64,000 nt of DNA from Oikopleura dioica (lineage: Eukaryota > Animalia > Chordata). A program made the position numbers and the translations under genes. The stretch lies in NCBI GenBank assembly GCA_907165135.1, contig OU015568.1, forward strand, positions 10,106,001-10,170,000, read 5' to 3'. Positions 50,770 to 51,946 of this stretch are shown in pieces. The stretch's first letter is position 1. Every line of letters begins with the position of its first letter. The notes under the pieces were generated by a model. The model was not told the origin of the DNA and made no database searches. It saw only the letters and a list, made by a program, of their open reading frames with translations.

Positions 50770-51946
50770 ATGGACGCAATGACACCACAAAACATCAAAG
50801 CTGAAAACCTTGCCGCCTGGGCGTCATATCAAGACTTCCAGGTCCCGAACATGGGAGAGCGAATGTCCGAGGTCTCCACACCACCAGCATTCTCACCGAT
50901 TAGTAGCGTTGATACCCAAGCCTTGGAAATCTATGAAAGTCCTGCTCCCCAACAAATGCAGTATGAACAATCCTACCCACGTAAGAATCTAAAGTCAGAC
51001 AATGAAATTAAAGTACTCTATTCTAGTTCAGCTCACCTATCCTATGACACCAGCTCACCAGCTTTTTGATCCTCCACAATTCACAATCCTCTCCCGAGCA
51101 GCTGCTTCCGTGATGCAGCACACCGATACTGAGAGAACTGGGATCGTCTTGTTCGTCGAGAAAAACAAGCACACTACGGTCGAAATTTCTCATGATTGTA
51201 TTCAAGCGGGAGATACCCTCCTGTTTTCCTTCGGATACAAGAATATTCCTCTTCAAACCCGACATGAGAAGCTTATCAGTTGCTCTTGCAGTGAGCAATC
51301 GGGCTTTGTGATTATCAACGGAAAGGAAGGACACCAAGGTCAGGCCCGCTTTATGAGAAAATTATTTACTTTTGAGTTAGTTTACGGTGGAGTGAATGAG
51401 GAGTTCGTGCTCAATAACTACTTGATGGGAAGCAAGATGGAGCTCAAACTCAGCTTCAAGCACAACACCTCTTGTTTCAAGCCGCTGATCGTCGACAGAA
51501 TGCAGAACCGTGGAGTTTCTCCAATCATCACGATGGATATTCAAGTTCTTGATGGAAACAAGAACCCAAAGTAAAACACTTTCCCGTTATCCTTGTTTAC
51601 AAATATTTCAAGGACAAAGAAGCAGAGAGTCACGCTAAAAGTTGGTAGCAATGTGAAAAGAGAATTCGAGAAATTCGTCGGCTACCCCACCCAACCGACT
51701 CGAGCTCGATCAAAGCGCATTTCTGGTCGACGCACTGCTTTGGCAATCTGTGATGCCAACTCTTTCAAGAGCGATCACTCAAAGAGTAAGATTCATTTTT
51801 CCTATAACAGTTTTAAGCTTTTACTTATAGAGCTCCTCTTCAAGAAATCAAAGAAAGGCTCTACCCTAATCATTCCAGCTAGCGATACTTCTTTGTTTGA
51901 GGCTCTTGCAATCAGACTAGGTGCAGAAGTGGTCGTCGAAGAGTAA
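50770..51946 (+). CDS. Candidate highly divergent p53-family transcription factor (4 exons)
   Basis: By-eye alignment to the p53 DBD (LFVEKNKH, ISCSCSE, FKHNTSCF, MQNRGVSPIITM, TLKVGSNVKRE) and to the oligomerisation domain (STLIIP..FEAL); introns 50981-51026, 51571-51612 and one more. Confidence 0.55.

What the first reader, a model, noticed from the sequence alone, without database searches (positions are those of the whole stretch)
50770..51946. Probable cryptic p53-family gene with swapped zinc ligands
Seen and aligned by eye to the human p53 DBD from memory: LFVEKNKHTTVEI ~ MFCQLAKTCPVQL; AGDTLLFSFGYKN ~ PGTRVRAMAIYKQ; KLISCSCSE ~ VVRRCPHHE; LSFKHNTSCF ~ YNYMCNSSCM; MQNRGVSPIITMD ~ MNRRPILTIITLE; TLKVGSNVKRE ~ EVRVCACPGRD. 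The C-terminal STLIIPASDTSLFEAL resembles the oligomerisation domain FTLQIRGRERFEMF. The p53 ligands C176/H179/C238/C242 appear as C / nearby C / H / C, i.e. a Cys3His set with His moved to the other loop. R273 becomes K, R280 is kept and C277 is lost. Inference: an extremely diverged p53 relative, likely missed by BLAST annotation, with possibly altered DNA specificity.
Basis: inference. Interest (0 to 1): 0.75.

Follow-up and report, generated by a model that had tools for sequence, protein, structure and literature searches.

The report
Hidden second p53-like gene in Oikopleura
This stretch is a real, expressed and conserved five-exon gene of the tunicate Oikopleura; sequence searches cannot name its protein, but it is predicted to fold like the DNA-binding core of the tumour suppressor p53, so it is probably a very diverged second p53-family gene in an animal reported to have one or none.

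Summary
I add one in-frame 42-nt intron (51339-51380), giving 5 exons and 333 aa. The gene is under purifying selection (dN/dS 0.12). A spliced contig of a sister lineage confirms the model.

Sequence methods find no p53 signal. Pfam P53, a PDB profile search, hhalign and shuffling tests against this genome's own Pfam-positive p53 gene are all blank. Only larvacean orthologues exist; the NCBI one is an unnamed Oikopleura dioica protein.

Structure prediction points to p53:
- Full-length orthologue, AlphaFold2: Foldseek E about 1e-7, and Z about 10 over about 165 residues against p53, p63, p73 and CEP-1. These four representatives rank first among 48,161 chains, above CP2/Grainyhead.
- A domain-only model repeats the ranking more weakly (Z 6.5).
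- The ESM Atlas model and language-model features of the orthologue also point to P53.

All models have low confidence, and two checks were blank.

I could not measure their geometry. I put about 0.8 on this being a diverged p53-family DNA-binding domain. It is a new member of a known kind. The scan had not noted it on other DNA.

The parts
50740..50769 (+). Short leader after a TTCAG acceptor-like site (50741-50745). Possibly a trans-splice acceptor plus 5' UTR.
   Evidence: The string TTCAGAAAAATTGAAACGG is kept in the spliced contig L008 of a lineage whose protein is only about 55% identical. The one metatranscriptome contig that lies on the gene starts at 50750. That it is a trans-splice site is inference.
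50770..50980 (+). Exon 1: start codon and the Pro/Ser-rich, acidic N-terminal region, with a short predicted helix. Possible activation region.
   Evidence: ORF. Aligns to the N-terminus of the orthologues. dN/dS 0.10. Helix 13-21 in the orthologue's model. Metatranscriptome contig over 50750-50939.
50981..51026 (+). Intron 1 (46 nt, GT..AG, phase 1)
   Evidence: Same ends in L003-L005. Genomic read-through proteins P0004 and P0008 carry extra residues at this place, which the spliced P0007 lacks.
51027..51338 (+). Exon 2: first half of the p53-like domain. It holds SRAAAS (51092-51109, at the place of loop L1), EKNKHTT (51158-51178), LQTRH (51251-51265) and C-S-C-S-E (51281-51295, at the place of p53 C176-E180).
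   Evidence: These are the longest runs identical to orthologue P0003.
51339..51380 (+). Intron 2 (42 nt, GT..AG, phase 1). It is in frame and has no stop, so it sits hidden inside the long ORF.
   Evidence: Identity to L003 is 71% here against 86-93% in the flanking exons.
51381..51570 (+). Exon 3: second half of the sandwich, with K-H-N-T-S-C-F-K-P (within 51443-51484, at the place of p53 C238-C242 in loop L3) and MQNRG (51500-51514).
   Evidence: Lowest dN/dS of the gene, 0.05.
51571..51612 (+). Intron 3 (42 nt, GT..AG, phase 2)
   Evidence: Absent from the spliced P0003, P0007 and L008.
51613..51785 (+). Exon 4: last strand and helix of the domain, KVGSNVKREFEK (51638-51673, at the place of p53 R273-E284), followed by a basic cluster TRARSKRISGRR (51698-51733, NLS-like).
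   Evidence: The 12-residue run is identical in P0003. Strand 259-265 and helix 269-276 in the model.
51786..51830 (+). Intron 4 (45 nt, GT..AG, phase 1)
   Evidence: 60% identity to L003.
51831..51946 (+). Exon 5: C-terminal strand-turn-helix (STLIIP 51860-51877, SLFEALAIRLG 51890-51922) and the TAA stop at 51944-51946. Possible oligomerisation element.
   Evidence: Strands 315-319 and 322-326 and helix 331-342 in the orthologue's model. That it drives oligomerisation is inference.
52076..52081 (+). AATAAA about 130 nt after the stop. Possible poly(A) signal.
   Evidence: Pattern only.

Best explanation
The locus is a functional five-exon gene for a 333-aa nuclear protein, found so far only in larvacean tunicates. 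Its central part of about 200 residues is a strongly diverged p53-family DNA-binding domain. That means an Ig-like beta-sandwich whose long loops and C-terminal strand-plus-helix form the DNA-binding face. Most likely it works as p53 does. The helix segment KVGSNVKREFEK would lie in the major groove: the counterpart of p53 R280 is kept, R273 is K, and C277 is N. Loop L3 (KHNTSCFKP...NRG) would approach the minor groove. A metal would tie L2 to L3 through C-x-C and H-x3-C, instead of the usual C-x2-H and C-x3-C. A basic cluster would serve nuclear import, and the C-terminal strand-helix would serve self-association. Shown here: the gene, its splicing, its constraint, its restriction to larvaceans, and the predicted p53-type fold of its orthologues. 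Inferred: homology rather than convergence, zinc binding, DNA binding, and oligomerisation. It is a second p53-type gene of this genome, beside a more canonical one about 5 Mb away on the same chromosome.
For: Gene reality:
- Intron-exon contrast and conserved GT..AG ends.
- dN/dS 0.12 against L003 and 0.13 against L004.
- The spliced contig L008 carries the orthologue without introns, between the same neighbours.
- One metatranscriptome contig lies on exon 1.

Fold, model 1 (full-length orthologue P0003):
- Foldseek against the PDB: the top 50 hits are all p53/p63/p73/CEP-1, E 2e-7 to 1e-6, and 282 hits have E<=1e-3.
- VIA-align: Z 9.3-10.1, 159-169 residues aligned, rmsd about 3.7 A, model 85..280 to p53 105..289.
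- A Foldseek-independent scan of 48,161 representative chains puts the four p53-family representatives first (Z 10.0-8.9). CP2c (8.1) and GRHL2 (7.4) follow. Generic sandwiches score 7.2 or less with only about 110 residues aligned.

Fold, model 2 (P0007, domain only):
- The same four representatives come first again, at Z 6.2-6.5.
- The Foldseek top 50 are again only the p53 family, E 3e-4 to 3e-3.

ESM Atlas:
- Its own model of P0003 matches p53/p63/p73 clusters at TM 0.53-0.60.
- Language-model features give P53 clusters as all of the best hits (score 0.85, 179-180 of 256 features shared).

Order of secondary-structure elements:
- The elements of model 1 follow p53's S2'-S3-S4-H1-S5...S8-L3-S9-S10-H2 one for one (the p53 topology is from established knowledge).

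Constraint:
- The longest runs identical between the window protein and P0003 (54% identity overall) are SRAAAS, EKNKHTT, LQTRH, CSCSE, LKLSFKHNT, CFKP and KVGSNVKREFEK. These are the segments that map to L1, L2, L3 and S10-H2.

Prior hypothesis:
Against: - No sequence method sees p53. Pfam P53 and CEP1-DNA_bind give nothing at E<=10 for the window's exons or for any family member.
- The six-frame PF00870 scan of the genome hits another locus, not this one.
- The PDB sequence and profile searches are empty.
- hhalign against the genome's Pfam-positive p53 family is empty.
- Alignment scores against that family equal those of shuffled sequences, z about 0.
- Both AlphaFold2 models have low confidence: mean pLDDT 39.6 and 51.7, core strands 50-77.
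- The second model's Z of 6.5 lies in the range the tool calls common, and the next unrelated chain scores 5.7.
- A shape search of the ESM Atlas with model 2 found no p53 cluster.
- The feature search with the window's own exon-2 ORF gave only noise. That piece is a truncated domain with the intron read through.
- The structural evidence comes from orthologues that are 54-60% identical, not from the window's own spliced protein.
- AlphaFold2 and ESM were both trained on data rich in p53 structures, so they are not fully independent of each other.
Confidence: 0.75

Rival explanations
1. It is a larvacean-specific orphan protein with a generic Ig-like beta-sandwich or a new fold. On this view the p53 likeness is an artefact: low-confidence predictors drift to a heavily represented PDB family, and the matching motifs are chance.
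For: All sequence tests are blank. pLDDT is 39.6 and 51.7. Model 2 scores only Z 6.5, against 5.7 for an unrelated chitinase domain. The atlas shape search with model 2 finds no p53. The feature search on the window's own piece gives noise.
Against: Three models from two predictors and two different sequences each put the p53 family first, out of 48,161 or 350,542 chains. The match covers about 165 of about 195 residues, including the C-terminal helix, whereas generic sandwiches align over about 110. The structural register agrees with a motif alignment made beforehand. The most constrained segments are those at the p53 functional loops.
Confidence: 0.13
2. It is a diverged member of the CP2/Grainyhead family, whose DNA-binding domain has the same general fold as p53, rather than of the p53 family proper.
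For: CP2c (Z 8.1) and GRHL2 (Z 7.4) come next after p53. CP2 clusters appear in the ESM Atlas lists (feature score 0.80, structure TM 0.59).
Against: p53-family chains score higher in both models (10.0 against 8.1, and 6.5 against 4.5-4.8). The ten best feature hits are all P53. PF04516 finds three other loci in this genome strongly (E down to 2e-30) but not this one or any family member. From established knowledge, CP2 domains have no zinc site, whereas this family keeps invariant Cys and His at the p53 zinc positions.
Confidence: 0.04
3. It is a true p53-family descendant that no longer acts as a sequence-specific transcription factor. It might, for example, be a partner or antagonist of the canonical Oikopleura p53, or a protein-binding module.
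For: By the motif register, several p53 DNA contacts are changed: K120 to A, R273 to K, C277 to N, and R248 uncertain (p53 contacts from established knowledge). H179 is lost. There is no detectable similarity to the canonical paralogue.
Against: The counterpart of the DNA-reading helix is the most conserved stretch of the whole protein: 12 identical residues at 54% overall identity. The R280 counterpart is kept. A basic NLS-like cluster follows the domain. dN/dS is 0.05-0.14 across the domain.
Confidence: 0.15

Closest known systems
Human p53/p63/p73 DNA-binding domain (Pfam PF00870)
   Same: - Predicted fold, with the same order of strands, loops and final helix.
- Cys at the places of C176 and C242, Asn at N239, Arg at R280 and an acidic residue at D281 (motif register, plus established p53 numbering).
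- Layout: N-terminal acidic region, core domain, basic linker, then a short C-terminal strand-helix.
   Different: - No Pfam or BLAST-level similarity.
- His at the place of C238. Ser at H179, with a Cys one residue earlier.
- R273 is K, C275 is G, C277 is N and K120 is A.
- L3 is about 5 residues longer, and the second half of L2 about 10 residues shorter.
- One paper reports that no MDM2 partner exists in this animal (PMC6778778).
C. elegans CEP-1 DNA-binding domain (PDB 1t4w)
   Same: It is the best or joint-best structural match (Z 10.0 with 168 residues aligned; Foldseek rank 1 for model 2). Like this gene, it is a p53 homologue of a fast-evolving lineage whose sequence is barely recognisable.
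   Different: CEP-1 keeps the canonical zinc ligands (established knowledge) and has its own Pfam model (PF09287), which does not match this family. CEP-1 is about twice as long.
The genome's other p53-type gene (L001, G000:C1:15263828-15264328; orthologues P0010 and P0011)
   Same: It lies in the same genome and on the same chromosome, has a similar size and layout, and has Asn at the place of p53 C277.
   Different: L001 reaches the Pfam P53 threshold region (25.8-26.4 bits, E about 1e-5) and keeps C-x2-H and C-x3-C. The window gene does neither. The two show no measurable sequence similarity.
CP2/Grainyhead DNA-binding domain (PF04516; PDB 8y7v, 5mr7)
   Same: The general p53-like sandwich; these are the second-best structural matches.
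   Different: Lower Z in both models. No Pfam match here, although the genome's three real CP2 loci match strongly.

Membership tests
p53 family (p53/p63/p73/CEP-1) | Significant match to the P53 DNA-binding-domain sequence profile (PF00870, cut-off 27 bits) | tested here: not met
   No hit at E<=10 for the window's exon pieces, for P0003 or for any of 10 family members. The six-frame genome scan with PF00870 hits only L001.
p53 family (p53/p63/p73/CEP-1) | p53-type fold: Ig-like beta-sandwich with large L2 and L3 loops and a C-terminal loop-sheet-helix | tested here: met
   Tested on orthologues P0003 and P0007, with low-confidence models. Foldseek E about 1e-7 and about 1e-3. VIA Z about 10 and 6.5, with the p53-family representatives ranked 1-4 of 48,161 in both scans. 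The ESM Atlas model gives TM 0.53-0.60. One shape search was blank.
p53 family (p53/p63/p73/CEP-1) | Zinc tetrad at the places of C176, H179, C238 and C242 | tested here: inconclusive
   By the motif register the residues are C, S (with a C one residue before), H and C. All are invariant in every family member that covers them. Their distances in the models could not be read, because no coordinates are given. Metal binding is untested.
p53 family (p53/p63/p73/CEP-1) | DNA-contact residues (K120, R248, R273, A276, C277, R280, R283) | tested here: inconclusive
   R280 is kept, R273 is K, A276 is S, C277 is N, K120 is A, R283 is E, and one Arg sits in L3 at 248 or 249 (the register is inferred, and the contact list is established knowledge).
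p53 family (p53/p63/p73/CEP-1) | Sequence similarity to a recognised p53 gene of the same genome | tested here: not met
   BLASTP, hhalign and shuffling tests against L001 and P0010 are all at chance level.
p53 family (p53/p63/p73/CEP-1) | C-terminal oligomerisation domain (strand-turn-helix) | tested here: inconclusive
   Predicted strands 315-326 and helix 331-342 in P0003 at low confidence. No Pfam P53_tetramer match for the last exon.
p53 family (p53/p63/p73/CEP-1) | Sequence-specific DNA binding and transactivation | not testable with these tools
   This needs SELEX, DAP-seq and reporter assays.
CP2/Grainyhead | Match to the CP2 profile (PF04516) | tested here: not met
   Three other loci match (E 2e-30 to 1e-12), but not the window. 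No family member matches.
CP2/Grainyhead | Best structural match is a CP2 or GRHL domain | tested here: not met
   CP2c scores Z 8.1 and 4.5, and GRHL2 7.4 and 4.8. Both are below p53-family chains in both models.

The most novel reading that the evidence does not exclude
Larvaceans carry a p53 paralogue in which the structural zinc site has been rebuilt with a permuted ligand set: C-x-C in L2 and H-x3-C in L3, so the His has moved to the other loop. The DNA-reading residues are changed too (K for R273, N for C277, A for K120). That would give a p53-fold factor with a new DNA specificity, working in a chordate that is reported to lack MDM2.
Probability: 0.3. Interest if true: 0.7.

Novelty: new member of a known kind. 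Interest (0 to 1): 0.55.

Why it matters
Oikopleura dioica is the fastest-evolving chordate model. The papers I could read report either no p53 or MDM gene (PMC6778778, data not shown) or one P53-domain gene (PMC8122590, Table 1). Nobody has studied how such an animal guards its genome; my own recollection is that it also lacks classical end-joining repair.

If this reading is right, the animal has two p53-type genes, and one of them cannot be seen by Pfam or BLAST. Three things would follow:
- Counts of p53 loss in fast-evolving lineages would need re-checking with structure-based methods.
- The gene would be a natural experiment on how far the p53 core and its zinc site can drift while staying under strong constraint.
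- It would be a concrete target for knock-down and DNA-damage experiments in a tractable chordate.

If the zinc ligands are truly permuted, that bears on the structural biology of the p53 zinc site, which is a hot spot of cancer mutations.

Tried and rejected
- Pfam on each exon piece, on P0003 and on all family members found no P53, CEP-1 or CP2 domain; the weak hits (AIM3_BBC1_C, DUF6646, Cep192_D4) are far under their cut-offs and I set them aside as noise.
- PDB sequence search with exon 2 and with the family profile: empty.
- Exhaustive phmmer against 1.84 billion representatives and two word-index searches gave only larvacean kin. P0006 is a low-complexity repeat and I discarded it.
- I searched for paralogues in the genome itself and found none.
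- BLASTP, hhalign and 400-shuffle global and local alignment tests against the genome's Pfam-positive p53 (L001, P0010) show no signal.
- The search from L001 for canonical p53 sequences, meant to build a p53 profile, returned only larvacean sequences. So I could not run a real HHpred-like test.
- RNA reads: the three species-labelled RNA-seq runs do not lie on the gene at 90% likeness and are probably another cryptic lineage. They give no splice junctions.
- The language-model feature search with the window's own exon-2 ORF gave noise.
- The ESM Atlas shape search with model 2 found no p53.
- MAFFT mis-placed the short exon-4 piece, so I left it out of the alignment used for folding.
- I rejected a pseudogene or non-coding reading (dN/dS 0.12, spliced transcript) and CP2 membership.

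The exons were searched one by one by reference, and the full-length database orthologues P0003 and P0007 stood in for the spliced product.
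Full report
**What is in the sequence.**
The window has the look of a compact animal genome: 40-45% G+C and introns of 40-50 nt. The best full-length relative of the gene is an NCBI 'unnamed protein product [Oikopleura dioica]'.

On the + strand an ATG at 50770 opens a gene that ends with TAA at 51944-51946. Reading by eye gives these exons:

| Exon | Coordinates |
|---|---|
| 1 | 50770-50980 |
| 2 | 51027-51338 |
| 3 | 51381-51570 |
| 4 | 51613-51785 |
| 5 | 51831-51946 |

The four introns are 46, 42, 42 and 45 nt long. 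All are GT..AG, with phases 1, 1, 2 and 1. The coding length is 999 nt, or 333 aa.

It is 42 nt long and open, so it hides inside the 190-aa ORF. It is betrayed by the alignment. The spliced proteins P0003 and P0007 jump from ...GYQ to YGG.... Every protein called from genomic metagenome contigs (P0002, P0004, P0008, P0009) runs into unrelated residues exactly there.

**Is it a real gene?**
Three metagenome contigs carry the same gene in other lineages: L004 and L005 at 96.6% nucleotide identity and L003 at 81%.
- Against L003 the exons are 81-93% identical and the introns 60-74%.
- Exon gaps come in threes, and all splice sites are kept.
- Summed over the in-frame exon pieces, dN/dS is 0.12 against L003 and 0.13 against L004. 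It is lowest (0.05) in exon 3.

A JGI contig, L008, carries the orthologue P0007 as one uninterrupted 355-codon frame. That frame sits between the intron-free 3' part of an ALG6/ALG8 gene and the start of a TPR-ankyrin gene. These are the same neighbours as in the window, where all three genes have introns. So L008 is spliced RNA. It confirms both transcription and the intron positions in a sister lineage.

For the window's own lineage, only one metatranscriptome contig (50750-50939) lies on the gene. The species-labelled RNA-seq runs did not map, so they are probably another cryptic lineage.

**What sequence methods say.**
They say nothing.
- Pfam finds no family for any exon piece at E<=10, for P0003 or for any of ten family members.
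- The PDB sequence search is empty, both with one sequence and with the family profile.
- An exhaustive phmmer scan of 1.84 billion representatives found only larvacean relatives. So did the word-index searches.
- The genome has no paralogue of the main exon.

A six-frame scan of the whole genome with the Pfam P53 model hits one locus, about 5 Mb away on the same chromosome (L001; 26.4 bits, model positions 22-186 of 193). That gene has C-x2-H and N-C-T-N-S-C and ...S-A-N-A-G-R-D, so it is a recognisable, if weak, p53.

The window's family shows no similarity to it. BLASTP, hhalign and alignment scores against 400 shuffles (z about 0) are all blank. I could not obtain canonical p53 sequences from any tool, because the search from L001 again returned only larvacean proteins. 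A true profile-profile test against the p53 family is therefore still missing.

**What structure prediction says.**
It is 351 aa, and 54% identical to the window's exon pieces overall. I used the 10-row family alignment.

Model 1 has low confidence: mean pLDDT 39.6, with core strands at 50-66. Its matches are:
- Foldseek against the PDB returns 282 hits with E<=1e-3. The 50 best are all p53, p63, p73 or CEP-1 DNA-binding domains, at E 2e-7 to 1e-6 and TM by target 0.5-0.6.
- VIA-align gives Z 9.3-10.1 with 159-169 residues aligned at about 3.7 A, mapping model 85..280 to human p53 105..289.
- A scan that does not depend on Foldseek, over 48,161 representative chains, ranks the four p53-family representatives first: CEP-1 10.0, and p53 chains at 9.5, 9.3 and 8.9.
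- Next in that scan come the two known structural cousins, CP2c (8.1) and GRHL2 (7.4). After them come generic sandwiches at 7.2 or less, with only about 110 residues aligned.

Model 2 is a domain-only model of the other full-length orthologue, P0007. Its mean pLDDT is 51.7, pTM 0.53, and core strands reach 65-77.
- It reproduces the ranking, but more weakly. The same four representatives come first at Z 6.2-6.5, and the next chain scores 5.7.
- The Foldseek top 50 are again only the p53 family, at E 3e-4 to 3e-3.

The ESM Atlas holds its own model of P0003.
- Its nearest structural clusters are p73, p53 and p63 (TM 0.53-0.60) and CP2.
- The language-model features of residues 75-290 have P53 clusters as all of their best hits (score 0.85, 179-180 of 256 features shared).

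Two checks were blank. The feature search with the window's own exon-2 ORF gave noise; that ORF lacks the last strand and helix and reads through intron 2. A quick shape search of the Atlas with model 2 found no p53.

**Register and residues.**
The secondary-structure elements of model 1 follow the p53 core one for one. The p53 topology and numbering are from established knowledge of human p53.

| Element in P0003 | p53 counterpart |
|---|---|
| strand 112-116 | S2' |
| strand 121-127 | S3 |
| strand 136-143 | S4 |
| helix 167-172, next to C173-S-C175-S-E | H1 with C176-P-H-H179-E |
| strand 182-186 | S5 |
| strand 210-217 | S8 |
| K-H219-N-T-A-C223 | M-C238-N-S-S-C242 |
| strand 240-248 | S9 |
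| strand 259-265 | S10 |
| helix 269-276 within K264-V-G-S-N-V-K-R271-E | R273-V-C-A-C-P-G-R280-D |

The offsets this implies are +20 near the N-terminus and +9 at the C-terminus. They agree with the end points VIA-align reports (85 to 105, 280 to 289).

In this register:
- C176, N239, C242 and R280 are kept, and D281 is kept as E.
- C238 is His. H179 is Ser, with a Cys one residue earlier.
- R273 is Lys, A276 is Ser, C277 is Asn and K120 is Ala.
- L3 is about 5 residues longer than in p53.
- In the window's lineage L2 is close to p53's length up to the Cys and about 10 residues shorter after it.
- P0003 carries a further 14-residue insert in L2.

The two Cys, the His and the Cys are invariant in all lineages that cover them. 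The longest runs identical between the window protein and P0003 are SRAAAS, EKNKHTT, LQTRH, CSCSE, LKLSFKHNT, CFKP and KVGSNVKREFEK. These are the parts that map to L1, L2, L3 and S10-H2.

This is what one expects if the p53 functional face is what selection preserves. Whether the four residues surround a metal could not be checked, because the tools return no coordinates.

**Other features.**
- After the core comes a basic cluster, TRARSKRISGRR (51698-51733).
- At the C-terminus there is a predicted strand-turn-helix. It resembles the p53 order of NLS then tetramerisation strand-helix, but no test supports it.
- The N-terminal exon is acidic and Pro/Ser-rich, with one predicted helix.
- Intron 3 is phase 2 and lies in the S9-S10 loop. 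By my register that is within about three residues of human TP53 intron 7, which as I recall is also phase 2. I note this as suggestive only.

**Weighing.**
The negative sequence results show that the family fails the usual membership test. The models are of low confidence, and AlphaFold2 and ESM are not fully independent. On the other side stand five points:
- Three models, from two programs and two sequences, pick the same family out of tens of thousands.
- The match covers nearly the whole domain, including the parts that set p53 apart from plain Ig-like folds.
- The family's known structural cousins come next in rank.
- The register agrees with a prior motif alignment.
- Constraint peaks at the p53 functional segments.

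I put the odds at:
- about 0.8 that this is a homologue of the p53 DNA-binding domain;
- about 0.04 that it belongs to CP2/Grainyhead instead (PF04516 finds three other loci strongly and not this one);
- about 0.13 that the likeness is an artefact.

That it still binds DNA as a transcription factor is an inference from the conservation of the helix segment and the basic linker.

**Novelty.**
The protein exists in public databases only as an unnamed or uncharacterised product without a domain. Of the papers I could search:
- One states that O. dioica has no P53- or MDM-related genes (PMC6778778).
- One counts a single P53-domain gene by Pfam (PMC8122590, Table 1). That fits the L001-type gene.
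- Two broad surveys of p53-MDM2 evolution do not mention the genus.

So the gene is a new, very diverged member of a known family. The possible permuted zinc site would make it a new variant if confirmed.

Noticed in passing
L001 = G000:C1:15262328-15265828 (match at 15263828-15264328, + strand): This is the genome's recognisable p53-type gene. It has two exons and about 400 aa. It has an acidic N-terminus with ...DDLFGF..., canonical C-x2-H and C-x3-C zinc motifs, ...SANAGRD in the DNA-reading helix, and a helical C-terminus. Pfam P53 scores 25.8-26.4 bits, just at the 27-bit cut-off, and CEP1-DNA_bind 18.5 bits. One paper says the species has no p53.
   Followed up: partly
L008 (JGI contig, 2556 nt) against window 49833-52694: One intron-free contig spans the 3' end of the ALG6/ALG8 gene, the whole p53-like gene and the start of the TPR-ankyrin gene, in the same order as in the window. 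This suggests a polycistronic (operon) transcript, or overlapping transcripts, that include the p53-like gene.
   Followed up: partly
window 52461-55321 (+): The downstream neighbour encodes TPR repeats, an ankyrin-repeat block and a long acidic, Ser-rich tail (Pfam TPR_2 and Ank). From memory the layout resembles TONSL, a replication-fork and DNA-repair factor. If so, a DNA-damage gene sits next to, and perhaps in one transcript with, the p53-like gene. The TONSL identity was not tested.
   Followed up: partly
window about 48900-50675 (+): The upstream neighbour is an ALG6/ALG8-family glucosyltransferase split by many short introns (Pfam PF03155, E 1e-19 and 3e-11 on two exon ORFs). Its stop lies only 94 nt before the ATG of the p53-like gene.
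   Followed up: yes
window 50600-50769: The stretch upstream of the ATG is 92% identical to the diverged lineage L003, more than most coding exons of the p53-like gene. It covers the last ALG exon and the short spacer, including TTCAGAAAAATTGAAACGG, which is also kept in L008. It may be a trans-splice acceptor or a regulatory element.
   Followed up: partly
window 50645-50719: Reads of three RNA-seq runs labelled with the species lie only on this 75-nt piece. They are 90-95% alike, share three fixed differences (50652, 50653, 50660), and run on into unlike sequence on the left. The runs seem to come from a different, strongly diverged lineage of the species complex.
   Followed up: no
window 51339-51380 and 51571-51612: Two of the four introns are exactly 42 nt, a multiple of three. 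The first has no stop codon. Prokaryote-style gene callers on metagenomes therefore emit read-through proteins (P0001, P0002, P0009) that carry 14-16 spurious residues in the middle of the domain.
   Followed up: yes
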